From positions 71,238,001 to 71,302,000 of the forward strand of contig NC_043000.1 in the NCBI RefSeq assembly GCF_006345805.1: DNA of 64,000 nt, written 5' to 3'. Of this stretch, positions 16,338 to 64,000 are shown in pieces. The notes beneath the pieces are model-generated. The model was not told the DNA's origin. It saw only the letters and a list, made by a program, of their open reading frames with translations, and searched no databases. A program made the translations under genes and the position numbers. Positions within the stretch are counted from its first letter, which is position 1. The number at the start of each line of letters is the position of its first letter. The DNA is from Octopus sinensis. Its lineage: Eukaryota.

Positions 16338-16395
<58 letters not shown>

Positions 16396-17216: not shown

Positions 17217-17249
<33 letters not shown>

Positions 17250-17250: not shown

Positions 17251-17474
17251 AATATTAGAAAAAAATCACCTTTTATCAATTCACTTTTTAATTGTTATTT
17301 TAATTTTAATTTTTCTATTATATGTAATTTAATTATTCATTTTGAATTGATAAAAGGTTCTTTTCTAATATTTTATATATATATTATATTGTGTGGAATT
17401 TGATTTAGTATTTCTAAATTGAATTCTTTTTCCTTGTAAGTTTGGATTTTATTCCCTCAAATAATAATTATATG

Positions 17475-20300
17475 GACAGAGATTTAGAGACATATTACTT
17501 GAAGCCTCTGACAAAGTAGAAGGGGATAGAGCATCACAGGGGGTAGAAGACAGCTGGACGTTTCTAAGGGACAACCTGCTGAGAGCCACTGACCAGATCT
17601 GTGGCTGGTGCAAAGTCCCCTCTGGACCTAGAATAACGTGGTGGTGGAACAATATTGTAGACAGGGCTATTAGAGAAAAGAGACAGGCTTGGAAGGTCTG
17701 GAAAAATGGGGGTAGCAGGGAATTGTATCAGACTGCCAAAAGAGAAGCTAAGAGACAGGTTTATTTAGCTAGAGGGGAAGCAGATAAGAAAAAATTTGCC
17801 AATGTTCTGCGCCGTGAGGACCAAAGACTGGAGGTGTTTCGCGTTGCAAGACAGTGTGTGAGAGAGAATCGTGATGTGGTAGGAGAGAAGTGTGTTCGCA
17901 TGGAAGATGGTTCACTTGCGCTAAATGAGGATGCAAAGAGAGAGGTTTGGAGATGCCACTATGAAAGTTTTCTGAATAAAGAAAATGAATGGGATAAAGA
18001 GAGTCTGCCGAATGTTGACCCAACAGAGGGACCAGCTATCCGAGTTGATAGTTCCGTGGTAGCTAAGGCAATTAGAAGCATGAAGACAGGAAAAGCCCCT
18101 GGCCCATCAGGAATCACTGCAGAGATGCTCAAAATGTCTGGTAGTGTCGGCTATAGCCTAGTCACCCATATAGTTAATCAGGTGATACACAAAGGAGTCA
18201 TACCCAATGACTGGTGTAGCAGCATAATAGTCAACTGCTACAAAGGTAAAGGTGACGCCCTAGATACAAATAACTACAGAGGTATCAAGCTGTTGGATCA
18301 GATGATGAAGGTTACGGAGAGGGTCATAGCCCAACTAATTAGAGAGAGAGTTAGTTTAGATGAGATGCAGTTTGGGTTTGTGCCAGGGAAAAGTACTACT
18401 GATGCTATATTCCTGGTAAGGCAGCTGCAGGAGAAATACCTAGCCAAAGATAAGCCCCTGTACCTGGCTTTTGTTGACATGGAGAAAGCCTTCGACAGGG
18501 TCCCCCGATCCCTTATCTGGTGGGCAATGAGGAAACTAGGGATAGATGAATGGTTAGTGAGAGCTGTGCGGGCCATGTATAGGGACGCTGCTAGTAGGGT
18601 GAGGGTTGGAAATGAGTACAGTGAAGAATTCCGGGTAGAGGTAGGGGTCCACCAAGGCTCAGTACTCAGCCCCCTCCTATTTATCATAGTCCTCCAGGCA
18701 ATAACGGAGGAATTCAAGACAGGATGCCCTTGGGAGCTCCTCTATGCTGATGACCTTGCTCTAATTGCTGAGTCGCTATCAGAACTGGAGGAGAAGTTTC
18801 AGGTGTGGAAACAAGGATTAGAATCGAAGGGCCTCAGAGTCAATCTAGCTAAAACCAAAGTCGTAATCAGTAGGAAGGTAGACAAATCACAAACGCCTTC
18901 AGGTAGATGGCCCTGCTCGATCTGTAGAAAAGGTGTAGGTAGAAACTCTATAAGATGCACCAAGTGTAAGCTATGGACACATAAGAGGTGCAGCAATGTC
19001 AAAGGAAGGCTAACTAGGAAGATGGTTTTTGTATGTGGCAGATGCTCAGGAACAATAAACACTGAAAATGCTCTGAGACCAACTTCCGTCACTTTCCAGG
19101 GAGAAAAACTAGAAATAGTTGATAGTTTCCGTTACCTAGGTGACCAAGTCAGCAGCAGGGGCGGGTGTGCTGAAAGTGTAACTGCTAGAGTAAGAATAGC
19201 TTGGGCAAAGTTCAGAGAACTCTTACCTCTGCTGGTGACAAAAGGCCTCTCGCACAGAGTGAAAGGCAGACTGTATGATGCATGTGTACGAACAGCCATG
19301 CTACATGGCAGTGAAACATGGGCTGTGACTGCTGAGGATATGCGTAAGCTCGCAAGAAATGAATCCAGTATCCTCCGATGGATGTGTAATGTCAGTGTTC
19401 ATAATCGACAGAGTGTAAGTACCTTGATAGAAAAGCTGGACCTAAGAAGCATCAGTTGTGGTGTGTAAGAGAGACGTTTGCGCTGGTATGGTCATGTGGC
19501 GAGAATGGATGAAGATAGTTGTGTGAAAAAGTGCCACACCCTAGCGGTTGAGGGAACCTGTGGAAGAGGCAGACCCAGGAAAACCTGGGACGAAGTGGTG
19601 AAGCACGACCTTCGAACTTTAGGTCTCACTGAGGAAATGACTAGAGACTGAGTCCTCTGGAAGTGTGTTGTGCGCGAGAAGACCCGGCAGGACAAGTGAG
19701 TCCATAACCCGTGGCCTTCTACTTGGGATGGAGCCAGCCTACGTATGCATACCTTCCCTTCTTGGGACACAAAACTCTACTTGTGAAGACCTGTTGAGGC
19801 AAGTGAGGATCAGAATCGAAATCGATCAATGGAAATTGCAGATGTGTTACCAGTGCCGGTGGCATGTCGAAACTCTACTTGTGAAGACCCGTTGAGGCAA
19901 GTGAGGATCAGAATGGAAATCGATCAATGGAAATTGCAGATGTGTTACCAGTGCCGGTGGCATGCAAGAGAACCTTCCGTTTTGCGACCGTTGCCAGCAC
20001 CGCCCTGTTTCGTGTCCGTTGCCAGCCTCGCCTGGCCCTTGTGCCGGTGGCACATAAAAAGCACCATCCGTTCGTGGCCGTTTGCCAGCTCTGTCTGGCA
20101 CCTGTGCGGGTGGCACGTAAAAAGCACCCACTACACTCACGGAGTGGTTGGCGTTAGGAAGGGCATCCAGCCGTAGAAACACTGCCAGATTTGACTGGGC
20201 CTGATGAAGCCTTCTGGCTTCACAGACCCCAGTAGAACCGTCCAACCCATGCTAGCATGGAAAACGGACGCTAAACGACGATGATGATGATGATGATGAT
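17475..20300 (+). mobile_element. RTE-clade LINE, 5'-truncated, second subfamily, premature stops near the C-terminus
   Basis: ORF 17723-19468 with RT motifs; CAA-to-TAA stop in GV*ERRLRWYGH; long 3' UTR ending TAAACGACG(ATG)n. Confidence 0.95.
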
Positions 20301-34814: not shown

Positions 34815-35287
34815 ATCTATCTATCTATCTATATATCTATCTATCTCTTTGTCAGTCCATGAGTTAGAGAAAGAGAGTATAATTTTATTTATATGTACCT
34901 GTACAGATATATATGTATATAAAATGTGTTTGAGAATAAAAGATGTATCTAGTCTTTTCCATAACTTTTAAGATAACTAATTATCTTGAATTATTCAAGT
35001 TGATAACATCTATGTTGGATGAAACTTAGGAGTATATATTTATGATGCTATAACTTACATCAATTTCAATTCACTTTTGTCTTAAGAAATCATTTGTGTA
35101 ACAGCCAACTATATATTTTCTTATCTAATTCTTCAATTCTGTTTTTCATTCATATAATCAGATTGGAATCAGGATTCACAAGCTAAATGATAACAAAGTT
35201 TAAACTTGAAACTTCTGTGTGTTTTTATCTATTAAATTTGTATTTTACTATTTTTATTCATTAGTTTGACTTACTCTTTTTTTCTAG

Positions 35288-35716
35288 TTGCACCTAAATC
35301 TGATATCAGAAGAGCTCAGTTTAAAGGGAGCAAATCAATGCCTCCTATTGATACCTCATCTCCAGGACCAATCACTCAACCTATTAAAGATGCTGAGGAG
35401 AGTCCATTTCTTACATCCATGTTATCTTCATCTACTGACAGACCAGTGGACTCATACAACTTGCCTCTAAAGTATCTTCTTCAAGTGACTGATTCAGAGT
35501 TACAGAACATGTCACGTCAGGTGCCAACTAGTCAAAAAATGTCAATGGCTGGTGATGGCACAACTGCTATCACTCAGCTTGTTTTGCGTCCTGTATCTTC
35601 AGGCCAGTCAAATGTGCTGCAAGATAATGTAATTTTATCTGATATTATCAAGATACCTGTTTCTGAGAGAGGAATAGAAAAGTATCAGTTAAAACCTGAT
35701 ACCATTGAATCACAAG
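35288..35716 (+). CDS. shn: shn coding exon (APKSDIRRAQF...PDTIESQ), 429 bp
   Basis: TTTCTAG acceptor, CAAG|GTACTG donor, inside ORF 35266-35748; phase 1/1 matches exon 38119. Confidence 0.85.
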
Positions 35717-36019
35717 GTACTGTGAACTTTATGCACTTATGTTATTGATTTCATTTTATGTACAAAATTCTTTTTGTGTAAGTAAAAATAGGTGAATTAG
35801 TTGACTTTATAGTTGTATATTATTGGTATTTGTTGAATTTACCTTACAAGGATGAAATGCAAATGTAATCTTGATCATAAATGTTTTCAAATCTTGATGT
35901 CCTTCCAAATACTAATCACTCAGCCATGAAGGAGGAGTGCAAATTAAAAGTAATGTGATTTTAACTTTGACATCAGTAAAGCCTTTGATTGTGTCTTAAA
36001 TGCACCAATCAAAATTTTC

Positions 36020-37527: not shown

Positions 37528-38118
37528 TAATAATAAATAATATCCCTTTATAATATTAAAAATCATTATGAAGCACTTTTAAATTGGCTATAGAATTGAT
37601 CCTAATACCCATAGAGCTTTGGTAATCTTTGGAGTGATTATTTTTTAAAATTTCTTAACAAGATTAAAAGGAGTAATACCAAGAATTCCCAAACTTGTAG
37701 GTTAGGTGTAATTAAGTTTCTGGGTGATATATGTAGGATAATGGCAATGGTTCATGACATTACTATCAGATAGTTTTGGTCAGTTCTGATTATAAAAATT
37801 ATGGAACAAGAGTGAGTGGCAAAGAAACTATATCTAATATACCAGGCAAATTTGATTTATTTTTGGTTACTAATTAAGCCTAATGAAATTTGAACTTATA
37901 ACTGCAAGCTACCAAATAACTTGTAAATTATACAATCTAGGTCCTACCAATAATTCATTGTCTTGTATTTTCTAATTTTTATAGCAGTTTTGTAACGTGT
38001 GTATGTATGAAGTATGAGGAAGAGGATAATCATTTACTAATTGGATATATATGATTATTGCTTTCTTTCTTAATTTTTCTTTTTGAGATTTTAAAAAAAT
38101 ACTATTATTACACTTTAG

Positions 38119-41100
38119 GTTTCAAACCTGTGTACACAAAACAACAATGTGATCAGTATGAATCAAATCCGGTGAGTTACAGCAACTTCAAATCTCGAAC
38201 TTTTAAGTCACAACAACCCCAGAGTGGGGAAAAGTTTAGGCAGCAAATTTCTGGAGATAATATAGTTGGTCGTAAACGTAAACTCCCCACAAAACCAGGC
38301 CGCCACATTTGTCATTTTTGTGGTCTTGGATGTGCTAAGCCAAGTGTGCTTGAGAAACACATCCGATCACATACTGGAGAAAGGCCATACCCTTGTGTGG
38401 CTTGTGGTGTATTCTTCAAAACTAAAAGTAACTTGTACAAGCATAATAAATCACGAGCCCATGCTGTGAAAGCTGGTCTCGGCCAAATCCCCACAAGTAC
38501 ATCATCTGAAATGACAAGTACTGAAGGTGAGGGTGACAATGAAGATGCCAATGAGAGTGAAGAAACACAAACAGAAACAAGTGATACAGATGGAGAAAAT
38601 GAAGAGAAGCAAATGAAACATTTCAGGAAAGAACAATGTTTGTTAGAATTAGATCCTTTACGATTAAAAAGAGGTTATTCTGAATCTGATGCCAAAATAC
38701 GTATTGAGGAATTTCAAGAGAAAAAGTCAACATCTTTAACAGAAAATTGTTTTTTGGGAGATCAGCATCAATCTGTTAATGTTACCAAGATGACTAGTAG
38801 TGGAAGCAGCAACACCACAAATACCGTGGCATCTGTAAATATCCATGGAGAAATAAGCAAAGGTTCATCTTTGGAATTACATACTGATAGTCCACTTCAT
38901 CATTCTGGTAACTTAGATGGTAAATCTAAACTATCAGTTTCAAGTATGACTGGACACACACCTGTTTATTTGCCAGATAAATGCTTCTATGATGTTCCTC
39001 AGATATCTAAATTACCAGAAATCAATTTAAATGAAGAATCTAAAGATGACATTTTGGTACCAGTTGCAGATAATGTAGTTTCTGGAAGTTTACAAAGTTC
39101 TCATGCTAAGGAGTCAGTAAAATCTTTCAACTTTCATGACAAGCAAACTGTGAGTTCCAAAGACCATGTGCCATTATCATTATCTTTACAGCCTTCACAC
39201 AGCAAGTCGCAAGATAAATCTATACATCCCATCAACAAAAGCAGTGAAGAGACAAAAACAATAAGTTCTCTCAGCATCACAGGATCAACACCTACTGATA
39301 AAAAAAGACTTGAGGAGCATATTTTGCAAATCATATCTAAAAATGATACTATTGTAAATACTCCAATGTCTGAACCACCACGTCAGAAAAGGATATTCCG
39401 TCAACACAGTGACCAACCAAACACTTCAGGTTCAAAATTGGAAGAGCTGCCTCAGTCAGTGTCAATGACTAAAGTATCAATACCAAGTATTTTATCAATA
39501 CCCTTGGCTCCAATACCTGATGACAATGATATAAACAAAGATTTATGCCTCAGTCCACAACCTTACTTTACTCCTCTTATTTCTGAAAAGAAGGAAATCT
39601 CAAATCCAAAACTCCCAGAATTACTTTCATCTTCATCTAAGACAGAAAACTTAAATGAAAAACTTTCTTCCACCAACATTTGTTCTGGGCTCCAAGGAAG
39701 CCAAGAAATTAAAATTGAAATTAAGTTGCCTAAAACTGGTTCCAATGTTGTAACTATTGCAACACCATCACAGTCTATCATTGGTAAGCCAAACATGCAA
39801 TTTTCACCTACATCTGTTGTTACTACAGTTGTAAATTCTTCATCTTTTGTAAAAAATCCTGAAAATAGTGTTATTAAAGGCCTTCTTTTGAAAGGTAAGA
39901 CATCTTCTCTGACTTCTCCAACTCCCCCAAGTAGAGTCATTAAGGAAAAATCAAGTAGTGTTGATGAGATAACAACTATGAGAAATGAGTCAACACTCAT
40001 TTCCTTCCAGCGTGAAGATATTGGCACTTATTCTGTGTCAAATGTGTCTTCTGTTTACAGCAAGGCTTCACAACTACAAAAATTTCGACAGTCAAAAAGT
40101 AGTTCATCTTCTACAAGTATGGATTCTCATACTTCCCCTATTACTATAACGGAAAGAAGACCAGACCGACCTGCTCTAGTGAAATGCAGCTCTTTCGAGA
40201 AGGATGTACCACCTGGGTACCTATCTCACAGTTTTTCAAGTGATCGTGAAAGTTCAGTTGATGTTGATTTTGAGAAAGGAGAACGTTTAAAAGATGATAA
40301 ACATGATTCAAATGCTGTTGTATTTAATACTGAAAATTATGACCTGGTGGCACCAAAAAAGAAAGGAAGGCCTAAGGGCTCAAAAAACAAACCAAAGATG
40401 ATGAATGCAACAGTATCAGTGCAAGGTCTATCTTCTACTACTTTAGCTACATCTTCAAGTTCATCACAAAATTCTATTTTACTGGCAACTCTGAAGCAAC
40501 CTTCCCTGCAGCAACCCTACACAGAGCCATCTTGTGATTTGCCTCCTTGGAAGGTAATATTGAAAAATAAACTTATAAAGAGATCTATGAGTACAGAGAG
40601 AATGCTCTCACAAGAAAAAGATTCTGATTCATTCTCTGCACAGTCTACTATAAGTACATCTCCCAGCACAGAAAGTTCTAGTAGCCTTGGACCTGTACGA
40701 GCTTCATCTTTTGAAATGTTAAAGCAGCCTATTGATAATGAACGGAATGAAAGAAACTCACCATTAAAGAAACGTAAAGTTCCAAATGAGTTTCTTCAAT
40801 CTGATCCAATTTCAAGACCTGGAGTAACTCGAGCTGGATCAGAACCATTAATGTCACAAATGGGGCTAAATGCTGCTTCTTCAAAATCTTTATCTGAAAA
40901 ACGCCTTGGCAGTCTACCCGAAACACTGGAGTATAAATATTCTGTTCCTCAAGTGACAAACTCTTTAAATAATCCAATGTGTTCAGGTCCAGTTACAGTA
41001 CCTGTCGTTGTTGCACAACCAATTGTTATCCCAATGAAATTTTCTGATTCTATTCAAAGTGCCCATGTACCTGTCACTTCAGGGTGGAGCAAATTGAACA

Positions 41101-42484
41101 AAGTTGCTTTATCAACACACTGTGATATTCAGTTATCTTTGCCAGCTATTCCAGCCACTTCAACATCAAGCAAACAAATTCTACAGTTACCATTGGTAAC
41201 AAGTCTAGTTGTTTCAAAATTTCCTAAAGACAATAAAATAGAAGCAACAAATCTGACAGAAGAATTCCCATTGTTAAATACTTCAAAAGAATTGTCTACA
41301 AGTGTTAGTAATAGCACTGACATAGTTAGTGAGACAAACACACAACCAGATGTCACTGCTATTGTAGTTCCTGTATCTGCTTGCCAAGCCTCTCTTCTTT
41401 CAGGAGACTCTACTCTAACATCACTTAAAGAAGTCTCAACTGCATCAACAACTGGATGTAATACCTCAAAGCAACAAATTATTACTTCCTTGCGGAGTTT
41501 AACACAAACTACATTTTGTTGTGTTCAGCGTTTGCAACCCATGTATGTTCCACAAGGTGAAAATCAAAAAATTTCGATGTATTCTAACTGGAGGGTTTCA
41601 AAACATACACCACATCCAAGCAATCTTACACCTCAGATGTCCTTATTTCTATACAATTCTAAGAATACAAGTGATCCTATATATTCTGTGGCCAAGAATA
41701 AATCTGAAACAAACGTGACTGAGAGTTCTGAATGGAATTTGTATTCCAAACGAAAACTTCTGCCATTGAGTTCTTCTGTTGTTGAGAAACTTTCCAATGG
41801 AGTGTTAACCATTGATACAACTGTGGCCACAGAAGTTGTCAAACTACCAACAGACATTATGATATCTGATAAAAAAGATATTGGTTTATTGCCACAATCT
41901 GAAAATAAGGTTGACTCTGTACTAACTAATTCCAGTTCAAAAGAAACTGTTACAACCAAAGAACCCAAAAGAGTTCGAATATTTCAAGGTGGCTTTCGTT
42001 CTACTGAAGAGTATACATATATTCGTGGAAGGGGACGAGGGAAATATGTGTGTGAGGAATGTGGCATTCGTTGTAAAAAACCAAGCATGTTGAAAAAGCA
42101 CATCCGCACCCATACAGATTTGCGGCCATACCACTGTAGACATTGTCGTTTTTCTTTCAAGACTAAAGGTAATTTGACTAAGCATATGAAATCAAAAGCT
42201 CACCAAAAGAAATGTTTGGAACTCGGTATTGATCCTGTGCCTATTATTGTTGATGAATCACAAATTGACTCAGAAGCTTTAGCTGCTCAGAGTGCTATAG
42301 CCAAAGAGACTAAGAGCTTGGATGATGAGAATGAAGATGATGAAGAAGATGATGATGATATAGATGATGAAGAAGAAACTGATGATGCTGATGGCCAATT
42401 TTCGGATTCTGAAGAAAGTGCCCGTACAAGCTTTGAAAGAATGGACACTAATGAGACAGTTGATACATCTATTGACAGAGAAAG
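38119..42484 (+). CDS. shn: shn giant exon (4,366 bp): ZAS finger pairs at 38310-38462 and 42051-42203, conserved TTFCCVQRLQPMYV...KISMYSNW block, acidic tract
   Basis: Inside ORF 38058-42488; CACTTTAG acceptor, GAAAG|GTAAAT donor; phase 1 in, phase 2 out. Confidence 0.97.
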
Positions 42485-43531
42485 GTAAATATGTTTGCAG
42501 GAATATTTTATTGTCTTTTAATTTAATGTAATTTCACTATAAAGTAATGGACTGTTGAACTGTAGATGAAAATTCCTTTTCAGTTAGTAAATATAATTTT
42601 ACTTTTCAGAATGATGCAAAAATGTTTTTAAAACATCCTATTTAATGAGCTATTTAGACTTGAAATTATAAAATATGATAGATATTTCCTTTCCGATTTA
42701 TAGCTGGATATATTAATAGTTTGATCTAAAAATTATACTACAAACATATTTGAATGCTAAAAACATTTAGTGGAGGCTTGGTTGATGTATATGAAAGAGA
42801 TAATTTCATTTGTTTGAATATGTGATAAAAATGCATGACTGTATCCTCTTTCAAAGACACTACAATACATTAATTTCCAAATTGTTATACTTGAACTAAT
42901 AGAAATCACTCTTTCATTTCTCTGATCCAAAAGATTTTCCTAGTCTGTGCTTTTCATTTAATGAGTTATTGAAAGATGTGTAGCTGTTGCTGAAGCTAAG
43001 AACAGGGAGTTTTTTTGCCATAGAAGGATTCTGTTTTGAAGGACCAACAGGCAATCATTGTCTCATATCCGTATGCAATCTATTCACATGACTGGTTCTA
43101 ATGAAATCATCCATTTTCCAACTGATTTTGAATAATGCCAATGTTCTGTGGCTTTTTAATGAAACGCTAATTTTACCTGAGTTTTTTCTAAAATTATCTC
43201 AGTAATTGATGATATTTTGAAATGTTTAATTATGATGATTTGAAGTACTGAGTTGAATTGTTTCCCAACTCAGAATTCTTGGTATATGACTAGTTGACCC
43301 TTTTGCTTGATAGCAAAATCCTGTGGTTTACAAAATTCTTTGCAAATAAAATGAGAGGAAACTGATGATTCTGTGAGTTACATCAAAGAAAGAAGAATTT
43401 TTAATATTTTGGGACTGTGGGATGTTTGAATGTTCTTTATTATTACATTTAATTGTTGTGTGCATTTTAAACTTTTTTTTTTTTTGCTTTAATATTCTAA
43501 TAAATATATTTTGGTATTGTTATTTTTGCAG

Positions 43532-43684
43532 TGAATGTGGTATGCCAACACATTCTTCAAGTTTAGATGTTGCTGAAACAAGTCGAATATCAGAAGTTAA
43601 TTCCTCTGAGGTCTCAGAATCTGAGCATGCTAGTGGCTCAGAAATTGCTGTGTCTATGACCTCTGTCTATGTTGGAACATCAGG
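43532..43684 (+). CDS. shn: Probable shn exon, symmetric phase 2/2, 153 bp, Ser/Glu-rich (ECGMPTHSSSLDVAETSRISE...)
   Basis: TTTTTGCAG acceptor, CAGG|GTTAGT donor, open frame matching both neighbouring exons. Confidence 0.65.
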
Positions 43685-46274: not shown

Positions 46275-46560
46275 TTATGTTAATTAATTGTAAATAAATA
46301 TTTTTTTCTCCTTTGTATAATCACTATATTCAAGGAATAATATTTCCAAAATTAGTATAGCATTATGAGAGCTTGAATAATGTAGTAGATTAATAGTGTC
46401 CCCCAAAAAATAATAATAATTAGATACCTTGTTATGAGAGGCAGTTATATAATTGAATTCAGTTAAAATTTTTATTGAAAATATCAACAAAATAATGATT
46501 AACATAAATTTTGCATTTAAGTTTGTTTCAACAATTTATTTCCCATTTTTCTTTGGACAG

Positions 46561-46692
46561 GAGTGGCAAACCAATCACAAATTGATAATGAGATTGCTCG
46601 TAGTCTTTTAGATCTATCTCAAAGACAAGTGCAGCCATCAGAAGATACTGCAAAAGAAATTTCAGCCAATGTGGCATCTCATACCAAAACAG
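46561..46692 (+). CDS. shn: shn exon (VANQSQIDNEIARSLLDLSQ...SHTKT), 132 bp
   Basis: CTTTGGACAG acceptor, CAG|GTACAT donor, phase 1/1, open frame. Confidence 0.85.
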
Positions 46693-49799: not shown

Positions 49800-51755
49800 A
49801 ATAGACAACAAGAAGAGTGTGATGCGATTGCAATAGATGTTTTAATGGGTGAACGGTATTTTGACAGCTGGCCTGTCTTTGTCGATTTCAAAATGAAAAG
49901 TGATAAAAGTTCAAAATTATAGAAATTCAAATCCAATATACGAACGAGAGCAACCAACATCCCCATGTTGATGGAATGACATCATCAGTCTTCAGATTTC
50001 AAGTTTACTACTGACAAAAAGAAAAAGAAAGGAGAATATTTAATCAAACAGTTTTGTGTAAATATGATGAAATTCACTTGTCATTTTATTAATTCCTGCA
50101 GGGCATGATGTTAACCAGCAAACATATTTCTCCTCATGCATTTTGAGCATTGAAAGTGTAGCAGATTCAGAATAGTTTCTGAGAATATGTACTTCCAAAT
50201 CTTTTTTTCAAAATCGCAGCTGTTTGATGCAAAATGTTCAGCAAGTTCTGTTGAACTACTATTATTGTGTCTGACATCATATCTGTGCCCATTGAATCTT
50301 TTGTTTAATTGTTCTGCTGTACAACCAACATAAACCAAGCTGTGTTTGATGCATTCTGCTAAATACACCAAATGGGAATCTCTGCATGTCCCACCTTCTG
50401 TGTTAATCATAACATTTCTATTATGTTTCTTGATGGAATTCACTTGGCTCATTTTGTTGCACAATGAACAGGGCTTACCTCTCTTGCAGCTGTTTTTCAA
50501 ATTACAGCATGCAGGAATTCCAATGTTAGTTTTTTTTTGGAGTCAGAAGTAGAGGTTAATAGTTCTCTTATATTTTTTTTCCATCTAAAGGCTACAATGG
50601 GTGGCTGAGGAAATATTTGTTTGAAACGAGCATATTTTTCCATAACATGCTGGTAACTGTCATGTTGAAATGCTTGTGAAATTTCGGTGCCATTAAAGGA
50701 ATTCTGTCAGATATTGTACTTTGCCAAAATTATGCATGGAAGTTTGACTTTCTTTGCTAATCTTTGCTATGTCATTTGCTATTTCCTTTAATCATGATTC
50801 ACTGTAACTGCATTTGACATAATGGTGTACAAAAGTATTTGAATGTTTCCAGTAATTCCCTATATCTGTACAGATCTGTTTTATCCTCAAAAATTGGGAT
50901 TTCAGATTTGACTGAATTATATGATGTGGATGATCAGAGCAGCAGTGGAGGTAAATGTGGAATGATGTGGGCTTGCAAAATAACTCTGTCGCTATTCTGC
51001 CTCCAGAAAACTTAACTTTTGTGTCCAAATTTAAAATGCTAGTTTTTGAAAAACTAGATGTAAATTTTACATTGGACTTAAAGCCATAGTTTTTAGCATA
51101 ACAGTCACAAAAATGCAAGTCAATTAAACTATCCTATGATCCTTCCCAGACAAAAAAGACATCATCAATGAACCGTAACTGAGTATTGGTTCATGACTAT
51201 GTAGGGATTTGGATGTCTTCAGTAACTTTCGAATTTTGTCATGAAGACATTAGCGAAATTAACTGCCATGGGGGTACCCATGGTGCAACCCCTTGTCTGG
51301 TGGTAAAATTTTTGTCCAAACTCCATTGTGTTACTTTGTAACACAAACCTCAATAGCCTACAGAGAAAATTAGATGGAATAATCTGCTACACTTTCAGTC
51401 CTTAAAAGGCATGAGGAGAAATATGGTTGTGAGTCAACATCACTCTATGAAGGGATGAATAAAATAATAGAGAAATTTCATCATATTTACACAAAACTGT
51501 TTGATTAAATATTCCTCTTCTTTTTCTTTTTCTTTTCTCTTTTTTTTTTCTTTTTGCCAATTGTAAACATGAAATTTGAAGACTGATGATGTCATTCCAG
51601 CAATATGGGGATGCTGGTTGCTCTCATTCATATTTTGGATTTGAATTTTTATTACTTTTCATTTTGAACTCGATAAAGACATGATACCTATCGATATATT
51701 GTTCAACCAATAAAATATTTATTGCAATCACATCGCGCTCTTCATATTGTCTAAT
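49800..51755 (-). mobile_element. Penelope-like element remnant (RT C-terminal half plus GIY-YIG) flanked by about 300-bp inverted terminal repeats
   Basis: MGTPMAVNFANVFM, LRFIDDV, LFCKPTSFHIYLHCCSDHP...SQFLRIKQIC; GIY-YIG-type LVYLAECIKHSLVYVGCT...RFNGHR; 49800-50100 is the reverse complement of 51455-51755. Confidence 0.88.
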
Positions 51756-53370: not shown

Positions 53371-53723
53371 AAAGTGAATTATAATAATAATATTTATAAT
53401 ATTAATAATAATAATATTACAAAAAAATTGGTAATGTTTCAGGACAATACAATGTGGGGTTACATAAAGAAATGTATTAAAACACAGAAAAACAATAACT
53501 ATTATATTATATAGAGCTTAATATAAGTGAGATCTGATTAGATTACATGGTTATGTATGGTTTAAGTAACAGCATTTTTGTTTCTTGAAATTGAACCAAT
53601 AGGCATATACTTAGTACAGATTTGAATTAGTTTAAGTAAATTAACATTAATGAATTTATTGTAACAAAACATTCCTAAAGTTTTCATAACTCAAACTACT
53701 GTGTGTTTTTTTTACCTTTCCAG

Positions 53724-53941
53724 ATACTAGTGAAAAAACATTGGTACGGCAGTACAGCTTTGATATGGCTGACTCTCCTGAGAGAGGTATGAGCAGGTCT
53801 CCATCCCAAACGGAACATCCAGAAATTCAAGTTTTTTCTGCTGATGAATGTGAAAAGTTTCCATCCTCAGTAAATGTTAGAGAGAAGGAAGAAAATATTG
53901 TGATTGTGCAAAGAGAAACTTCACCTATCTCTCATGAAAGA
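53724..53941 (+). CDS. shn: shn exon (TSEKTLVRQYSFDMADSPER...SHER), 218 bp
   Basis: CCTTTCCAG acceptor, AGA|GTAAGT donor; phase 1 in, phase 0 out; overlaps ORF 53741-53974. Confidence 0.88.
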
Positions 53942-54132
53942 GTAAGTAATACTTTTCAAGGCATTTTAAATTAAATTAAATTTATTGAGTAGTCATAGAT
54001 GCACATTACATCATAAACTGCTTATAAAGTTTCATTATTTCTTTGTTATTTGTTTCTTATATCCCCATCCTTTTTTTTTCTCATAAATTGATATTTTCAT
54101 GATTCTAACTATTGTATTTTCTCTTGTTTTAG

Positions 54133-57100
54133 AAGGATTCCAAAAGACAACAATCTTCTGAAAAAGAAGAGACTAACCTATCAAACAGCCAGGCGCTAAT
54201 GGCATTAAAGACAACAAAAGGTCCAACTCATTGTTTACCTTCAGGAGTTTCTGTTGATCCTGTATTAAGTGAACCTTCTTCAACTCAGAAAATTATTTTT
54301 GTTTCTGAGATACCACAGAGTTTACAAACCATTGTAGCTAATGATGCTGGTCAAACATCAATAAGCACGGTGTCATTATCTTTTACAGGAATTCTTCCTA
54401 ATGGCAGTATGGGCCCTCTTGTTGGCCAGGTGTTACAAGGTTCAAGTAGCACAACATTGAATTCTACTAATACTACCATTACTCTTTCTCCACTTATCCC
54501 TCCATTTCAGTTTCAGCACCCTTTCCAAGCATTTGAAAGATCATCGGAAATAAAACCTGAAGAAACAAATGTAAAGTTAAAGGAAGATACATCATCTACT
54601 GTAATCATACCACTGGTAGACACTTCTGGTGAGAGCCAGTCACCAATCTGTAACCCCAAAACTGTTTTGTTACCTCAAACCTCTTGTGTGCAAACAGCAA
54701 ATAGTGTTGCAACAAGCATTATTCATAATTCTGATTCTAATAATCAGCTGCAACCTCAGCCACTGATTGGGCAAGTAGTTTTGCCAAATCAACAAACACC
54801 AAATAATTCTTCACTTGTGAGTATAATTGTGACTAATCAAGCTTATCAGACTACAGATGGATTATCCCCACAAAATCAGAACAAGCCTGAAAATGGGTTC
54901 CAATCAGTATACCAACGCATTCAGTCACCTCTGCAACAACATAGTAATAGTGAATCATGTATATCAGAAAGCAGGCATATTGAAAGGTCATCACCTTCAA
55001 AACTTGGAAGCAATATGCAAGTCAATAACATGGCTACCATCAAACCTTCCAGCTATATTTCTGAAGGATCTCATCAACCTCTTGCAGTTTTTACTCCAAC
55101 TAAAATTGTTGGCCAAAAATCACACTCTGAACAACAATCATCTACATTTGAAAGACATTCACCTGTAATGTTTGTAGATGATATTCAAAGAAGAAATTTA
55201 TATGAACAAAAAAAACTAGCTGAACAACAAACATCTTTCAAGATTCAACCATCAACAATGATTTCAAATGTACAAGTACCAGTTCATCATATCAGTAGAC
55301 AATCACCAAAGACACATGTAGAGAAAAGTTTCTCCCCTACTCTGTTTGCTGACAATTACTCTACAACCAGACAACACCAAACTGATCTTTCTGCTTCTAC
55401 ACAACCACAGTTAGAAGAATTTTTTCCAGTGCATCAAAATTCAGACAACTTTTCTTCAACTCAACAACACCAAAGAGAAAGGTATTCTCCTATGAGACAA
55501 CCAAATATGGAACAGTATTCTGCTCCACAGAACCAAGTAAATAGATATTCACCAAATCAGCAACTAAATATGGACAGATATCCAAAGACACAGCAGCAGA
55601 TGGAAAGATATTCTCCAACGCAGCCACTAAATGCAGATAAATATTCTCCTACAAAACAAATAGACATGGACAAATACTCTACTACACAGTTACAGTTGGA
55701 GAGGTATCCTGCTACACAACAACAGAAAATGAAGCATTATAATCCTGTTCACCAAAGCAATGTAGAGAGATATTCACCCACAAGACAACTCCATGTGGAT
55801 AGGTATTCCACAGTTCAACATGTGGACAGGTACAGTCTATCTCAACAACATGCAGATTTGTTGCCTTCACAAAATTATGTTGAAAGAGTATCACCATACC
55901 ATCCTCTTGAAAGATTGGCATCTCCAAGGCATCACAGATTTTCTCCCACAAGACAGTTGGGAGATAGGATTTCACCAACAAGACATGTAAACAGACTTTC
56001 TCCAACAAGGCAGCATGTAAGCAGATTGTCTCCAACACATGTTGATAGGTTTTCTCCTACTTGGCAATATACTGACAAACTGTCTCCAACTCAACAAGGA
56101 GTAGAGAGATTATCACCTTCACGTCAGCATTCAGAGAGAATGTCTCCAAGCCAACAGTTTCTAACTAGATTCTCTCCAACAAGACAAACTAACCGAATGT
56201 GTCAAAATGTTGACCTTGTGTCTAATCCCAAACCTCACGTTGACATGTCTTTAGAATGCCAATCTCCAACTAGACAAATAATACGAATGTCACCTCAGCC
56301 ATTCGGTGATAAGATATCTGGAACTACTCAGATCAATAGAGTTCCAAACAAATCAAATGAAACTTCAGGTCAAATACCATTAGAGCCATCTTCAAGTAAT
56401 CTGTCTGAACAACAGTCAACTGATAGATCACTTCCAGAATCAACCATTGAAAAAGTAATCATTGAAAAGCATTTATCATACAGACATTTAGAACCTCAAG
56501 TTTCTTCGAAGATCTTCGGATGCAATGCAACATCTAAGCCTAATGAAACACTCTGTGTTGAAAAACAACATGTTGTAACCAGTATATCTACATCCTGTTC
56601 TCAGACAATGCAGAAGTCATTTAAAGAGGATTTGAACCGTTGCAGAGATTGCAATAAGAAATTCTCTACTTCACAAGACTATACTGTGCACCGGAGACAA
56701 CACATGAAAACGCATCGAAGTGAAGATGCTACTACTTCTCATACACGACCTCATCTTCATAAGTGCTTTCACTCAGAAGGACATGCAGATTCCCGCTCAC
56801 TGAGCACCGAAGAGATACCAAAGCCTCCAGACTGTGTGAATTGTAAGGTGGACTTCTGGAAGCAAAACCACTTACCTAAACATTTATGGGCAAAGACTCA
56901 TAAAATGACATTAGAGAAATTACGTAACAAACATTCATCATCAAGTGATAGTGAGCCTGCTAACCTTGCAGACTCAGTATCTGAGACAATTAGTCATTCT
57001 ACTTCTGCTGTCACCGTTGTAGCTCCGTCCAGAGTTGAAACCATCCCTGCTTCTGAAAAAGCACTCGATTTGTCGAGAGATGAATCTCTTACAGTAACTC

Positions 57101-57510
57101 AGACAAGTATTGCAAAAACTTCTTCCCTAATAACAACTGCGAGTGTTACTAATGCAGCTAATATTCAGAGTGTTAGTGTTTCTAGTGAACCTACATTTAG
57201 ATTAAGTGAAGAAGAAAGCAAAATAACTGGATTAGAAACTCCAAGCCAACCACAGTTCTTATTACACCAACGACCACTCTACCAAAATTATCTCGAACCA
57301 TATAGTGATTCTAGTATCAAAATTAAGGATGAACCATTAGAATCGGATAAATGGTCTTCTGTTCGAAATCACCAGTGGTTAAGAGTAACCAATAACAGTA
57401 CTGAAATGACAGGAACTGGTATTATTCCTGTAATGTCTGTAATGGCTGTTACTTCCCCCAATATGTGTAATCTTTGCCAAGCTGTATTTCCTTCACATCA
57501 CCAGCTTCAA
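54133..57510 (+). CDS. shn: shn second giant exon (3,378 bp): Q/S/T-rich region, R-x-S-P-T repeats, two C2H2-type fingers, first half of the C-terminal triplet finger
   Basis: In frame with ORF 54199-57585; TTTTAG acceptor, CAA|GTGAGT donor inside CNLCQAVFPSHHQLQ, which the next exon completes. Confidence 0.93.
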
Positions 57511-57656
57511 GTGAGTCTTTTTTTACATAAAATATATTCATTATTTCTGGCATTATTGTCATCATTTTCATTCATACTGTTTTGATTATAATCACTTATT
57601 TTGTGTGTTGTGTGTGTGGAGGATCATGATCATATTTCCAAAACAATAGATGCTAA

Positions 57657-61259: not shown

Positions 61260-61367
61260 AGTCATATTTTGGTGCACAAAAACCATCGACCATATGTGTG
61301 TGAATATTGTGATGCTGGTTTTACAAAAAAGCAGTCACTCAAAATTCATCTTCAAACCCATTCACTG
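61260..61367 (+). CDS. shn: shn exon (SHILVHKNHRPYVCEYCDAGFTKKQSLKIHLQTHSL), 108 bp
   Basis: CATTTTTAG acceptor, CTG|GTTGGT donor; completes one C2H2 finger and encodes the next. Missed by the ORF track. Confidence 0.92.
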
Positions 61368-62203: not shown

Positions 62204-62284
62204 TATTGTACTTTTGTTTAATGAACTTAATTCAGTTATATTTTTCTCTTCAATATCTTTACTTTTATCTTTTATTATATGCAG

Positions 62285-62689
62285 GATAAACCATACATTT
62301 GTGATATTTGTGGTGATACTTTTGCTTCAGCTGATAAACGTAGTGATCATTACCAGATTCATTCAGAAGCGCACCATAGAGGTGAGGATAGTATTACACC
62401 AGCATATCAACAACTACACCAAGTGGTTAGCCCTTTGCCTAAGGCTTACACAAGTTCACAAGAGTTGTATATGACCCTAACACAGCTACCCGGAAACCAA
62501 ACTCCATTACCTGAGGCATCTGCAATGGTTCAGCAAAAGCATGTACCATTCCGAACACATTTGCATCAAGATCAGCAATATTTGGAAATTTGTTCTCCAA
62601 ATGTTGTTGAATCAGCAGCTGTTACAGTTTCAGCACCCATCCTCACAACAGCTATCTCACCAGACTCAAGTTCAATCAGCAAGCCTTGA
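62285..62689 (+). CDS. shn: shn terminal coding exon (DKPYICDICGDTFASADKRSDHYQIH...ISKP*)
   Basis: ATGCAG acceptor; the spliced linker reads H-S-L-D-K-P-Y; stop TGA at 62687-62689. Confidence 0.92.
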   Translation, partial: DKPYICDICGDTFASADKRSDHYQIHSEAHHRGEDSITPAYQQLHQVVSPLPKAYTSSQELYMTLTQLPGNQTPLPEASAMVQQKHVPFRTHLHQDQQYLEICSPNVVESAAVTVSAPILTTAISPDSSSISKP

Positions 62690-63271
62690 AATGGACATAT
62701 TGCCCTTTGGTAATCAAAATCAATTTCAGTGGGAATTATTCCCTTCTGAAGAAATGCAGTATTCTGCAGTGGCATGCAGATAGCATCATATGCAACAACC
62801 AGATAGTCAGTCAATGAAAAGTGCATCCCCTAGAAAATTGCAGCTTAACCTACAGAGGGTTTTTCTGTTTACACAGGGGATATTTTGTTTGAGTGTCTTT
62901 GTTGTCACGGTGCAGAAAGCATTAGGCATGTCTCTTCCGAGGGAGACCAAGCAGAATTTCTTGAATGAGCCCCATGATGGCTTTAATTGCAACCTGCTGA
63001 ATAATGTTGTACCTATTTGATACACTTCCTCAAGCCTGCTCTTCAGTTATGTTTGAGCACTTTTTTCAGGTTGAAACTAAGATGTGTGTATAACACAAGC
63101 CTTTTCTCTTTCCTTGCCTGGGTGACATTTTTGGGTTATCAGGTGTTGAGAGTTACAAAGACATATGAGAATACATAGATCCTTGCAAGGAGAAACCAAA
63201 TACATGTGTATGTGCACGTATGTATGTGTGTGTGTGTGTTTATATATATATATATTACACATATGTATGTA

Positions 63272-63323
<52 letters not shown>

Positions 63324-63413
63324 TGTATATATGTGTACACATATATGTATATTTGTAAATTAATGTGAGTGCACTCAGATATACACACACACTTGTATGT
63401 ATGTACATATATC

Positions 63414-63480
<67 letters not shown>

Positions 63481-64000
63481 GAGACAGAGAGTGATGTGTG
63501 TGTGTATATATTTGTATATATATGATCTTTTGGGGTCAAAGTAGAACAAATTCACTTGACTCTACAGAAATATGCTTCAAATAGGTGAAGATTTTTCTTT
63601 TAACATGCACTTGCACAGATTCACATACATATATACAAATTTAAAAATTAAATACAATGATTAGAATACATTTTTTTTTATTTTTTTAATGACCCACTCC
63701 CATTTGTTGTAATTTAAATCCTGACTCCCTAAATTTGTTCCACAACATATACACTGTCTGATTTTGTTGGGAAATGTCCAAAGTCGGGTTTTATCCATAG
63801 AAGTGCTTGGGGTTGTTTTTAGAGCTTTTATTGAAAAATTTATAAAGTTTGTTTAATCTAATCTGTCTTTCAAAAGTGATATATTGTGTCTTGAAAAATA
63901 TCAGATTCTACCGGAAAGGAGAGAAAAAAAATTTTTTTTTCTGATATATAAAATCCTTATTAGATATCTACTTGTCTGTAGCCAGCTATGCCTCTCTCTC

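What the first reader, a model, noticed from the sequence alone, without database searches (positions are those of the whole stretch)
55471..56300. About 24 tandem R-x-S-P-T-like peptide repeats in Schnurri, half with a Pol II CTD-like YSP(T) core
Seen: about 250 aa of 10-12-residue units (ERYSPMRQ, NRYSPNQQ, ERYSPTQP, DKYSPTKQ, ERYSPTRQ, then HRFSPTRQ, DRISPTRH, NRLSPTRQ, ERLSPSRQ, TRFSPTRQ). The array has polarity: Tyr before SP in the first half, F/I/L/M/V in the second. Literal YSPT occurs three times and about 16 units keep SP. The DNA units are diverged while the peptide core persists, which suggests selection. Established: S-P-x-R is the CDK consensus, YSPT begins the RNA Pol II CTD heptad, and human HIVEP2 has S-P-x-R/K repeats after its second finger pair, the same relative position. 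Inference: an expanded multisite phospho-switch or condensate domain that could tune BMP/Smad cofactor activity or mimic the CTD.
Basis: partly seen in the sequence, partly recalled or inferred. Interest (0 to 1): 0.7.

Follow-up and report, generated by a model that had tools for sequence, protein, structure and literature searches.

The report
Ser-Pro repeat array in cephalopod Schnurri
The window encodes a cephalopod HIVEP/Schnurri transcription factor whose disordered tail carries about 26-30 ten-residue repeats built around Arg-hydrophobic-Ser-Pro; this is an enlarged, lineage-specific version of the Ser-Pro-x-Arg/Lys repeats already known in vertebrate HIVEP2/3, most likely a multi-site phosphorylation module and not an RNA polymerase II tail mimic.

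Summary
Window 55471-56300 (+) lies in a 3378-nt coding exon (54133-57510) of a HIVEP/Schnurri gene. It encodes 26 units of 9-11 residues: 16 [RK]xSP against 0.43 expected, and 18 SP. The first 12 units all have Tyr before the core, and the next 13 have V/A/F/I/L/M. A profile scan extends the array upstream to about 55348.

A cuttlefish orthologue has the same array (about 21 units, all Leu-type, no Tyr block) between colinear flanks, and two spliced cuttlefish transcripts include it. Cuttlefish units with identical peptides differ at 7 of 10 codons, all silently, so the peptide is under purifying selection.

Vertebrate HIVEP2/3 have a similar, published S/T-P-x-R/K array. Homology to it is unproven. 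The cephalopod array lies in a lineage-specific expansion, and the sampled oyster, annelid, nemertean, echinoderm and insect proteins lack one.

The Pol II CTD comparison fails on period (10-11, not 7), on the missing second SP, and on only 3 YSPT. In the Tyr block, Tyr is kept 12/12 but SP only 5/12.

Best reading: a disordered array of proline-directed phosphorylation sites, plus a derived Tyr/Arg "sticker" block. It is a new variant of a known kind, of moderate interest.

The parts
35287..35718 (+). HIVEP/Schnurri N-terminal coding exon (approximate limits of the tblastn match)
   Evidence: tblastn of cuttlefish full-length product P0138 aa 19-160, 58% identity
38118..42482 (+). Large exon with the ZAS-N finger pair, the ZAS-C finger pair and the acidic tail
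   Evidence: ORF translation shows HICHFCG...HTGERPYPC and YVCEECG...HTDLRPYHC pairs plus D/E-rich tails. It hits HIVEP1/2/3 and 'zinc finger protein 40'. tblastn with P0138 aa 160-1626.
43530..43664 (+). Small coding exon
   Evidence: tblastn P0138 aa 1627-1671
46560..46646 (+). Small coding exon
   Evidence: tblastn P0138 aa 1697-1725
53723..53833 (+). Small coding exon
   Evidence: tblastn P0138 aa 1779-1816, 66% identity
54133..57510 (+). Array exon (1126 codons), with acceptor ag at 54131-54132 and donor gt at 57511
   Evidence: Stop-to-stop open frame 54133-57585. Splice contexts printed. Colinear with the cuttlefish genomic exon P0130/L002, which ends at the same ...QL(E/Q)|V position. 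BLASTP against P0026 gives E=2e-96.
54505..54525 (+). Conserved FQFQHPF landmark motif upstream of the array
   Evidence: Present in the window, the cuttlefish, oyster P0017 and P0122
55348..55473 (+).
   Evidence: Profile scan scores 16.3, 2.1 and 8.1, against a 95th percentile of 8.59 for the maximum in shuffles
55474..55851 (+). Tyr block: 12 units with consensus M-(D/E)-R-Y-S-P-T-Q-Q-x. Tyr is kept 12/12, a basic residue 10/12, SP 5/12.
   Evidence: Tyr spacing 9-11 aa; 11 of 12 units have another Tyr unit as nearest DNA neighbour
55879..56307 (+). Aliphatic/Phe block: 13 units with consensus V-(D/E)-R-(L/F/M/I/V)-S-P-T-R-Q-H. SP is kept 12/13.
   Evidence: The units are as similar to cuttlefish units as to each other (0.547 against 0.562 nt identity).
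56305..56334 (+). Weak terminal unit GDKISGTTQI
   Evidence: Profile score 5.9, above the per-position 99.9% level but below the exon-wide threshold
56638..56703 (+). Lone C2H2 finger downstream of the array (CRDCNKKFSTSQDYTVHRRQH)
   Evidence: Pfam zf-C2H2 at aa 836-857, E=2.4e-4. The finger region is 67% identical to the cuttlefish.
57466..57510 (+). First half of the first finger of the C-terminal triple-finger cluster, split by the intron
   Evidence: Pfam zf-met at aa 1112-1126, a weak match. It aligns to cuttlefish CHLCSRTFTSAYQLE.
61269..61364 (+). Exon with the second C-terminal finger
   Evidence: tblastn P0138 aa 2881-2912, 75% identity
62270..62689 (+). Last coding exon: third C-terminal finger, C-terminus and stop codon
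   Evidence: ORF 62279-62689 with KPYICDICGDTF...H finger. tblastn P0138 aa 2910-3062.

Best explanation
Shown:
- The feature is an intrinsically disordered tandem array of a short linear motif in the C-terminal half of a cephalopod HIVEP/Schnurri protein.
- It lies between the second finger pair (ZAS-C) with its acidic region and the C-terminal finger cluster.
- The ancestral unit, shared with cuttlefish, is (D/E)-R-(L/F/M)-S-P-T-R-Q-H.
- The array grew and turns over by unit duplication, while the peptide stays under purifying selection.

Inferred mechanism:
- Each unit offers a proline-directed phospho-acceptor. S-P-x-R is the full CDK-type consensus. Arg at -2 with Pro at +1 also fits DYRK-type kinases.
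- The array would then act as a multi-site phosphorylation module. Graded phosphorylation of up to 18 sites would swing its net charge from about +16 to clearly negative.
- That swing would tune how the flanking finger modules engage DNA, chromatin or partner proteins such as the Smad complex and corepressors.

The Tyr block:
- The N-terminal 12-unit Tyr block is a derived sub-family that is not seen in cuttlefish.
- What is kept there is Tyr (12/12, evenly spaced) next to Arg/Lys in a Gln-rich context, not S-P (5/12).
- It is more likely a multivalent aromatic/Arg 'sticker' segment than a phosphosite array.
For: - Gene identity and position of the array.
- The array is far beyond chance.
- Orthologous array in cuttlefish between colinear flanks (E=2e-96), with 19 SP and 17 [ST]Px[RK].
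- The array is included in two spliced cuttlefish transcripts. One is the 3062-aa product on an intron-less 10.8-kb contig. The other is P0134, which crosses the downstream junction..
- Purifying selection: cuttlefish VERLSPTRQH units differ at 7 of 10 codons, all synonymous. Third positions differ at 6/10 against 1/20 for positions 1 and 2, p=0.002.
- Core pN is 0.15-0.19 against 0.48-0.62 in the unit flanks, with saturated pS. Ser and Pro codons vary only at position 3.
- None of the 8 substitutions between two close cuttlefish sequences touches an S-P.
- Disorder: AlphaFold mean pLDDT 43.6, pTM 0.13, no secondary structure. Mean hydropathy is below the charge-hydropathy boundary. There is no PDB relative.
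- Motif context: 9 SPx[RK], 14 RxSP and 16 [RK]xSP.
- The analogous vertebrate repeats are a described HIVEP feature (PMC1887724). [quoted passage not shown]
- Tyr block.
Against: - No phosphorylation data were available for any cephalopod, and none could be retrieved for the vertebrate repeats. The primary paper on KRC phosphorylation is not held.
- Kinase assignment rests on consensus motifs recalled from established knowledge.
- Half of the window's SP sites lack the +3 basic residue.
- The literature's own reading of the vertebrate repeats is DNA binding, not phospho-regulation.
- The AlphaFold run had no alignment, so its low confidence is weak evidence.
- The pN/pS contrast is partly circular, because units were picked by their core.
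- Array identity to cuttlefish (0.41 of aligned positions) is not much higher than that of the N-terminal flank (0.38).
- Absence of the Tyr block rests on cuttlefish sequences only (two closely related sources).
Confidence: 0.5

Rival explanations
1. Accessory DNA-binding array. The unphosphorylated S/T-P-x-R/K turns would contact the DNA minor groove, as proposed for SPKK motifs of sperm histones H1/H2B and as 'thought' for KRC/HIVEP3. This would add non-specific affinity to the neighbouring zinc fingers. It is not exclusive with phospho-regulation, since phosphorylation would switch the binding off.
For: - PMC1887724 describes KRC's five S/T-P-X-R/K copies as 'thought to bind DNA'.
- The array is net basic: +16 in the window and +20 in the cuttlefish.
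- It sits between DNA-binding finger modules.
Against: - There is no strict S-P-basic-basic unit in the window. The x position is T, S, M, N, Y or Q, with one SPRH.
- Every unit also carries an acidic residue.
- Net charge per residue is only +0.04 to +0.08, against +0.16 in vertebrate HIVEP2.
- The Tyr block is nearly neutral.
Confidence: 0.2
2. Largely neutral low-complexity expansion. Replication slippage or unequal crossing-over inflated a short motif in a tolerant disordered linker. The array would then serve only as a flexible spacer.
For: - Unit number and order differ between the two cephalopods, and cuttlefish has recent duplicates.
- The interval between conserved landmarks is 141 aa at most in oyster and 596-705 aa in cephalopods.
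- The Tyr-block S-P cores are decaying, with 5/12 kept.
- Other invertebrate HIVEPs do without an array.
Against: - Identical peptides are encoded by units that differ at 7 silent codons.
- 12 of 13 S-P cores are kept in old, DNA-diverged units of the second block.
- The motif and a comparable unit number (26 in the window, about 21 in the cuttlefish) are retained across a deep cephalopod split.
- Tyr is kept 12/12 in the Tyr block.
Confidence: 0.12
3. RNA polymerase II CTD mimic. The YSPT-containing units would be read by CTD kinases, phosphatases or CTD-binding factors.
For: - Three literal YSPT and five YSP.
- Tyr is evenly spaced.
Against: - The period is 10-11 aa, not 7.
- There is no S5-P6 equivalent in any unit.
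- Only 5 of 12 Tyr units keep S-P.
- The cuttlefish orthologue has no Tyr-type unit at all, so this cannot be the conserved function of the array.
Confidence: 0.03
4. The whole array is primarily a condensate-forming low-complexity domain, with Arg and aromatic or aliphatic stickers in polar Q/S/T/P spacers. S-P would matter for chain conformation rather than as a phosphosite.
For: - Disordered and polar, with regularly spaced Arg plus a hydrophobic residue in every unit.
- 12 evenly spaced Tyr and 17% Gln in the Tyr block.
Against: - In the ancestral block and in cuttlefish the -1 residue is mostly Leu, a weak sticker, while S-P is the best-kept element.
- There is no experimental handle here.
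Confidence: 0.1

Closest known systems
S/T-P-x-R/K repeats of vertebrate HIVEP2 (Schnurri-2/MBP-2) and HIVEP3 (Schnurri-3/KRC/ZAS3)
   Same: - Same protein family.
- Tandem units C-terminal to the ZAS-C fingers and acidic region.
- Very similar core with a basic residue upstream, a hydrophobic residue at -1, S-P, and a basic residue downstream. Vertebrate example: [20 protein letters not shown]. Cephalopod example: VERLSPTRQH.
- 11-12 [ST]Px[RK] in tetrapod HIVEP2 and 7 in HIVEP3.
- Described in the literature.
   Different: - The cephalopod array has roughly 21-30 units of a regular 10-aa period, against about 7-12.
- It is 256-330 aa long, against about 117 aa.
- It lies about 770 aa after ZAS-C, against 190-256 aa.
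- It precedes a C-terminal finger cluster that Pfam did not detect in the one vertebrate HIVEP2 scanned.
- It is Gln- and Thr-rich and much less basic (+0.06 against +0.16 net charge per residue).
- It has Arg at -2 rather than -3.
- The window has a Tyr-type sub-block.
- There is no array in the sampled oyster, annelid, nemertean, echinoderm, insect and Xenopus HIVEP1 proteins, so common descent is unproven.
SPKK / S(T)PXX minor-groove motifs of sea-urchin sperm histones H1 and H2B (from established knowledge)
   Same: - Tandem S/T-P-x-basic turns in a disordered basic tail.
- They double as CDK-type phosphorylation sites that regulate DNA binding.
   Different: - SPKK needs two basic residues after Pro. 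None of the window's units has this.
- Each cephalopod unit also contains an acidic residue, and the array is only weakly basic.
KSP repeats of neurofilament H/M tails (from established knowledge)
   Same: - Dozens of tandem basic-S-P units in a disordered tail.
- They are massively phosphorylated by proline-directed kinases (CDK5, ERK) to change charge and interactions. This is the clearest precedent for a long multi-site S-P array.
   Different: - They belong to a cytoskeletal protein, not a transcription factor.
- Lys is directly before Ser, rather than Arg-hydrophobic-Ser.
- Their spacers are Glu/Lys/Ala-rich.
- They are unrelated by descent.
RNA polymerase II CTD heptads (YSPTSPS)
   Same: - Tandem, disordered and Tyr-containing, with S-P.
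- Literal YSPT occurs three times.
   Different: - The period is 10-11 aa, not 7.
- There is one S-P per unit instead of two, and S-P is lost in 7 of 12 Tyr units.
- An acid and a base sit in each unit.
- Tyr-type units are absent from the cuttlefish orthologue.
Prion-like / FUS-type low-complexity domains with evenly spaced aromatic stickers (from established knowledge)
   Same: The Tyr block has 12 Tyr at 9-11-residue spacing, each next to Arg/Lys, in a Gln/Ser/Thr/Pro-rich disordered context.
   Different: - It is much shorter (129 aa).
- It contains regular acidic residues and Pro.
- It has no Gly-rich spacers.
- Self-association is untested.

Membership tests
HIVEP/Schnurri (ZAS) transcription factors | Two widely separated pairs of C2H2 fingers (ZAS-N, ZAS-C), each followed by an acidic stretch | tested here: met
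   Exon 38118-42482 encodes both pairs and D/E-rich tails. Top hits are HIVEP1/2/3 and 'zinc finger protein 40'.
HIVEP/Schnurri (ZAS) transcription factors | Colinear orthology of the array exon with an annotated HIVEP protein | tested here: met
   BLASTP against HIVEP [Acanthosepion pharaonis] gives E=2e-96 on both sides of the array. tblastn of the full-length cuttlefish product maps 8 colinear exons.
HIVEP/Schnurri (ZAS) transcription factors | C-terminal triple-finger cluster of protostome Schnurri. In Drosophila this is the Mad/Medea-interacting part (from established knowledge). | tested here: met
   The fingers are split over 57466-57510, 61269-61364 and 62270-62689. The same cluster is present in the cuttlefish and oyster proteins. 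Smad binding itself was not tested.
HIVEP S/T-P-x-R/K repeat region | Several (five or more) S/T-P-x-R/K copies C-terminal to the ZAS-C fingers and acidic domain | tested here: met
   9 SPx[RK] in the window array and 17 in the cuttlefish. The definition is taken from PMC1887724.
HIVEP S/T-P-x-R/K repeat region | Common descent with the vertebrate array: same position, and presence in intermediate lineages | tested here: inconclusive
   The array is about 770 aa after ZAS-C, against 190-256 aa in vertebrates. No array was found in 7 named non-cephalopod invertebrate proteins (plus three unnamed assembly-derived relatives) or in Xenopus HIVEP1. It lies in an interval of 596-705 aa that is 141 aa at most in oyster.
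SPKK-type DNA-binding motif | S/T-P followed by two basic residues | tested here: not met
   None of the 18 SP sites is followed by two K/R. The closest is SPRH.
SPKK-type DNA-binding motif | Binds the minor groove of DNA | not testable with these tools
   This needs gel-shift or footprinting experiments.
RNA polymerase II CTD-like repeats | Heptad period | tested here: not met
   Unit spacing is 9-11 aa. Tyr-to-Tyr spacing is 10-11 aa, with one of 9.
RNA polymerase II CTD-like repeats | Y1-S2-P3-T4-S5-P6-S7, with two S-P per unit | tested here: not met
   There is one S-P per unit at most. YSPT occurs 3 times in 26 units. S-P is lost in 7 of 12 Tyr units.
CDK-type phosphorylation sites | S/T-P-x-K/R consensus | tested here: met
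   Met at 9 of 18 SP sites in the window and at 17 sites in the cuttlefish array. This tests the motif only.
CDK-type phosphorylation sites | Actually phosphorylated | not testable with these tools
   No phosphoproteomic data are accessible. The KRC phosphorylation paper is not held.
DYRK-type phosphorylation sites | Arg at -2 or -3 with Pro at +1 (consensus from established knowledge) | tested here: met
   14 RxSP in the array, or 16 counting Lys. This tests the motif only.
Aromatic-sticker low-complexity domain (Tyr block only) | Evenly spaced aromatic residues in a polar, disordered sequence | tested here: met
   12 Tyr at 9-11 aa spacing, 17% Gln, low hydropathy and low pLDDT.
Aromatic-sticker low-complexity domain (Tyr block only) | Self-association or phase separation that depends on the aromatic residues | not testable with these tools
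   This needs purified protein.

The most novel reading that the evidence does not exclude
In the lineage of this window, an ancestral cephalopod phospho-acceptor array (R-L-S-P-T-R-Q units) gained a newly amplified block of 12 Tyr-type units. These units have traded S-P for an invariant, evenly spaced Arg/Lys-Tyr sticker. The combination would create a phosphorylation-tunable self-association or condensate module on a BMP/Smad cofactor. That would be a natural example of a transcription-factor disordered region acquiring a new interaction mode by repeat sub-functionalisation.
Probability: 0.12. Interest if true: 0.55.

Novelty: new variant of a known kind. Interest (0 to 1): 0.3.

Why it matters
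S-P-x-R/K repeats after the second finger pair are an old but functionally neglected feature of vertebrate HIVEP2/3, genes tied to intellectual disability, bone mass and immunity.

A much longer and more regular array of the same kind of unit in cephalopods, demonstrably under purifying selection, shows that this kind of module is either recurrently favoured or anciently retained in Schnurri proteins. It also offers a cleaner natural system for asking what the repeats do: about 20-30 near-identical sites, plus two contrasting sub-blocks.

The finding also corrects a tempting but wrong analogy to the Pol II CTD. It remains a descriptive finding in a disordered region, with no functional data, and the general kind is already known.

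Tried and rejected
- **Word-indexed protein search with the whole array exon and with its non-repetitive finger part.** No hits, although P0026 is in the database and aligns at E=2e-96 by BLASTP. This is a limitation of the search, not evidence that orthologues are absent.
- **Exhaustive HMMER search of 1.84 billion representatives with the array exon.** It returned only unrelated repeat proteins (for example NDRVSPATSN, KKLSPKRQVQ and AERYPPAR arrays) and Schnurri finger regions from other invertebrates. It found no further array-bearing orthologue.
- **Genomic locus of a second decapodiform (L001).** The 10-kb downstream flank is intron with retrotransposon ORFs and does not reach the array exon.
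- **Exact look-up of the window's own ORF.** It is not on record, so the source species could not be named.
- **Pfam on the exon.** No family covers the array. PF23611, flagged on vertebrate HIVEP2, turned out to be another zinc-finger model at the N-terminus, not a model of the repeats.
- **PDB sequence search.** Only a chance haemoglobin match at E=0.59.
- **dN/dS between the window and cuttlefish.** Rejected as uninformative, because synonymous sites are saturated even between units (pS 0.6-0.8). I used silent differences between identical peptide units instead.
- **The KRC phosphorylation paper and the ZAS review (PMC148227, PMC5977514).** Not held.
- **14-3-3 binding.** Considered and rejected from established knowledge: the canonical modes need Pro at +2, whereas here Pro is at +1.
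- **The antisense ORF 55712-56038 (108 aa).** Nothing supports it as a gene.
Full report
**1. What is in the sequence**

Window 55471-56300 (+) lies in a stop-to-stop open frame of 1150 codons (54133-57585). The window is 35% G+C, so an open frame this long has a chance probability of about 10^-36. The frame starts right after a polypyrimidine tract and AG (ttttag|AAG at 54133). Homology to the cuttlefish protein ends at CAA|gtgagt (57510/57511). The array is therefore inside a 3378-nt coding exon.

Counts in the 276 residues:
- 18 SP (shuffle mean 3.2, maximum 10 in 20,000 shuffles)
- 16 [RK]xSP (shuffle mean 0.43, maximum 5)
- 5 YSP, 3 YSPT, 11 SPT, 6 SPTR and 9 SPx[RK]

Anchoring on the basic-hydrophobic-S-P core resolves 26 units with 9-11-residue spacing.

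- The first 12 units (nt 55474-55851) all carry Tyr at -1.
- The 13 units from 55879 to 56307 carry V, A, F, I, L or M.

The DNA has diverged. Tandem Repeats Finder detects only 2.4 copies of a 30-nt unit, at 55970-56037.

A position-specific profile built from the units, with leave-one-out scoring, was calibrated on shuffles of the rest of the exon. It shows the array is somewhat larger than stated:
- ADNYSTTRQH at nt 55348 scores 16.3, against a 95th percentile of 8.6 for the maximum in shuffles.
- Weaker units lie at 55441 and 56305.

**2. The gene**

The upstream exon 38118-42482 encodes two C2H2 finger pairs, each followed by an acidic stretch. It retrieves more than 1000 HIVEP1/2/3 ('zinc finger protein 40') proteins. 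By far the best hits are cephalopod. P0001 and P0002 are 47-48% identical over 97% of the exon and score 1165 and 1115 bits, against 549 bits for the next hit.

A cluster look-up gave a 3062-residue cuttlefish product, P0138, on an intron-less 10.8-kb Logan contig. tblastn with it maps eight colinear exons in the window, listed under 'parts'. The exons downstream of the array encode a lone C2H2 finger and then a triple-finger cluster.

The source species could not be named, because the window's own ORF is not on record. At 48% identity to cuttlefish over the best-conserved exon, it is a cephalopod only distantly related to decapodiforms.

**3. Conservation and expression**

HIVEP of *Acanthosepion pharaonis* (P0026/P0129), the genomic exon P0130 (L002) and the transcript product P0138 all carry an array at the same place. 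It reads ...VERLSPKRQHVERLSPTRQHVERLSPTRQHVERLSPTRQHVDMLTPTRYH...

- The cuttlefish array has 19 SP and 17 [ST]Px[RK] in 256 residues, in about 21 units.
- It is flanked on both sides by sequence colinear with the window (BLASTP E=2e-96).
- The cuttlefish genomic exon reads into its intron at the same ...QL(E/Q)|V position as the window's exon.
- P0138 and a second, slightly different cuttlefish product (P0134) continue across that junction into the next finger.

In cuttlefish the array is therefore part of spliced mRNA.

All cuttlefish units are Leu-type. There is no Tyr block.

**4. Selection**

*Silent differences between identical peptide units.* In cuttlefish, units 418 and 428 (VERLSPTRQH) each differ from unit 438, which has the same peptide, at 7 of 10 codons, and every difference is synonymous. 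Third positions differ at 6/10, against 1/20 for first and second positions (Fisher p=0.002). Recent copying cannot explain this, but purifying selection on the peptide can.

*Codon positions in the window.* Ser and Pro codons of the second block are fixed at positions 1 and 2 and variable at position 3. The -1 codon keeps a middle T (a hydrophobic residue) while positions 1 and 3 vary.

*Pooled Nei-Gojobori proportions.* Core pN is 0.15-0.19, against 0.48-0.62 in the unit flanks, with saturated pS of 0.6-0.8. This contrast is partly circular, because units were chosen by their core.

*Close relatives.* Between two closely related cuttlefish sequences, none of the 8 substitutions in the array touches S-P. 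The numbers are too small for significance.

*Overall identity.* Array identity between the window and cuttlefish is 0.41 of aligned positions. That is no higher than the N-terminal flank (0.38), higher than the post-array linker (0.27) and lower than the finger region (0.67). What is conserved is the motif and the approximate number of units, not unit-by-unit sequence.

*Age of the Leu-type block.* The window's Leu-type units are as similar in DNA to cuttlefish units (0.547) as to each other (0.562). A few colinear unit matches exist: SPTW to SSSW, TDKLSPTQ to TGKLSPIR, and SERMSPSQ to TNRLSPSR. The Leu-type array therefore predates the split of the two lineages.

**5. The Tyr block is different**

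- Its 12 units cluster with one another in DNA (11 of 12 nearest neighbours are Tyr-type).
- Tyr is invariant (12/12), at 10-11-residue spacing with one spacing of 9. A basic residue precedes it in 10 of 12 units.
- Gln makes up 17% and the net charge is only +5.
- S-P survives in just 5 of 12 units, against 12 of 13 in the second block (Fisher p=0.011).

In that half, the constraint is on [RK]-Y and not on the phospho-acceptor. This is the opposite of what a CTD-like reading requires.

**6. Comparison with other HIVEPs**

Tetrapod HIVEP2 has 11-12 [ST]Px[RK] within about 117 residues, for example [24 protein letters not shown]. HIVEP3 has 7. These arrays lie 190-256 residues after ZAS-C.

The feature is in the literature. 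[quoted passage not shown] The unit logic is the same: basic residue, hydrophobic residue, S-P, x, basic residue. The cephalopod array differs in these respects:
- It lies about 770 residues after ZAS-C.
- It is two to three times longer.
- It is Gln/Thr-rich and much less basic (+0.06 to +0.08 against +0.16 net charge per residue).
- It precedes C-terminal fingers that Pfam did not detect in the one vertebrate HIVEP2 scanned.

No array is present in the oyster, *Owenia*, two nemertean, two sea-urchin, sea-cucumber and stick-insect proteins, nor in *Xenopus* HIVEP1.

The interval from a conserved FQFxHPF motif to the next finger is at most 141 residues in oyster, 261 in another invertebrate, 596 in cuttlefish and 705 in the window. 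The array thus sits in a cephalopod-lineage expansion. Common descent with the vertebrate array is neither shown nor excluded. Independent expansion of a similar motif is at least as likely.

**7. Structure**

- AlphaFold2 without an alignment gives mean pLDDT 43.6, pTM 0.13 and no secondary structure.
- Mean hydropathy is below the charge-hydropathy boundary.
- Neither Pfam nor the PDB has a relative.

All of this is consistent with intrinsic disorder. The single-sequence AlphaFold result is weak evidence on its own.

**8. Mechanism**

*Shown:*
- A disordered tandem array of a short linear motif, under purifying selection.
- It is expressed in an orthologue.
- It sits between the DNA-binding ZAS-C module and the C-terminal finger cluster. 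In Drosophila Schnurri that cluster builds the Mad/Medea repression complex (established knowledge, not tested here).

*Inferred:*
- The units are proline-directed phosphorylation sites. S-P-x-R is the full CDK consensus, and Arg at -2 with Pro at +1 fits DYRK-type kinases.
- A hydrophobic residue before pS-P and a basic residue after it also resemble preferred Pin1/MPM-2-type contexts. All of these consensus motifs come from established knowledge.
- Phosphorylating up to 18 sites would reverse the array's net charge of +16. That would give a graded switch for DNA, chromatin or partner binding.

I put this at about 0.5.

*Rivals:*
- The DNA-binding reading given in the literature for vertebrates is compatible with the main model but weaker here. 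No unit has two basic residues after Pro, and each unit carries an acidic residue (0.2).
- A near-neutral spacer expansion is contradicted by the silent-site evidence (0.12).
- A condensate-first reading fits the Tyr block better than it fits the ancestral block (0.1).
- The CTD-mimic idea fails its defining features (0.03).

**9. Verdict**

It is partly wrong: CTD likeness, and 'same relative position' read as homology.

The feature is a new, enlarged and internally differentiated variant of a known HIVEP repeat region. It is interesting mainly as a clean natural system for a neglected motif. It is not a surprise.

Noticed in passing
window 12100-15173 (-) and 17723-19468 (+): Two copies of a non-LTR retrotransposon in opposite orientation, upstream of the first mapped Schnurri exon. 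Pfam finds an Exo_endo_phos endonuclease, an RVT_1 reverse transcriptase and a weak PHD-like finger. The copies flank a long simple-repeat tract.
   Followed up: partly
window 16233-17258 and 63077-63555: Long microsatellite-like tracts (TA/CA-rich, read as YIYIYI/THTHTH pseudo-ORFs on both strands). The second lies just downstream of the last Schnurri coding exon, possibly in the 3' UTR.
   Followed up: no
window 50111-50500 (-): ORF fragment with a GIY-YIG nuclease domain (Pfam E=1.8e-5), in the intron between the exons at 46560-46646 and 53723-53833. It is probably a Penelope-like retroelement remnant.
   Followed up: partly
window 54505-54525 (+); P0017 aa 1898; P0122 aa 65; P0138 aa 1977: A short FQF(Q/E/S)HPF motif is conserved between the cephalopods, an oyster and another invertebrate Schnurri, inside otherwise fast-evolving disordered sequence. 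Its function is unknown. I used it only as a positional landmark.
   Followed up: partly
P0026 / P0129 (NCBI CAE1290971.1, CAE1290970.1) compared with P0138 (L003): The deposited Acanthosepion pharaonis HIVEP gene models jump from just after ZAS-N (...ENEDDPQK) straight into the second ZAS-C finger (TKGNLTKHMKSKAH...). They therefore omit about 1200 residues that are present in the transcript-derived product P0138. This looks like an annotation error.
   Followed up: partly
P0124 (507 aa): An unrelated protein has about 17 tandem (A/V)E(A/R)(E/D)RY(P/A)PAR units that resemble the window's Tyr-type units (ERYPATQ, DRYPKTQ). This is probably convergent, and it is the only Tyr-type look-alike in 1.84 billion representatives.
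   Followed up: no
searches compared: The word-indexed protein search returned nothing for the array exon or its finger part, although the database holds a cuttlefish protein that aligns to it at E=2e-96. Negative results from that tool on this kind of sequence should not be read as absence.
   Followed up: yes
window 55712-56038 (-): A 108-codon antisense ORF overlaps the array. It has no homologue and no other support, and is most likely a by-product of the repeat composition.
   Followed up: no
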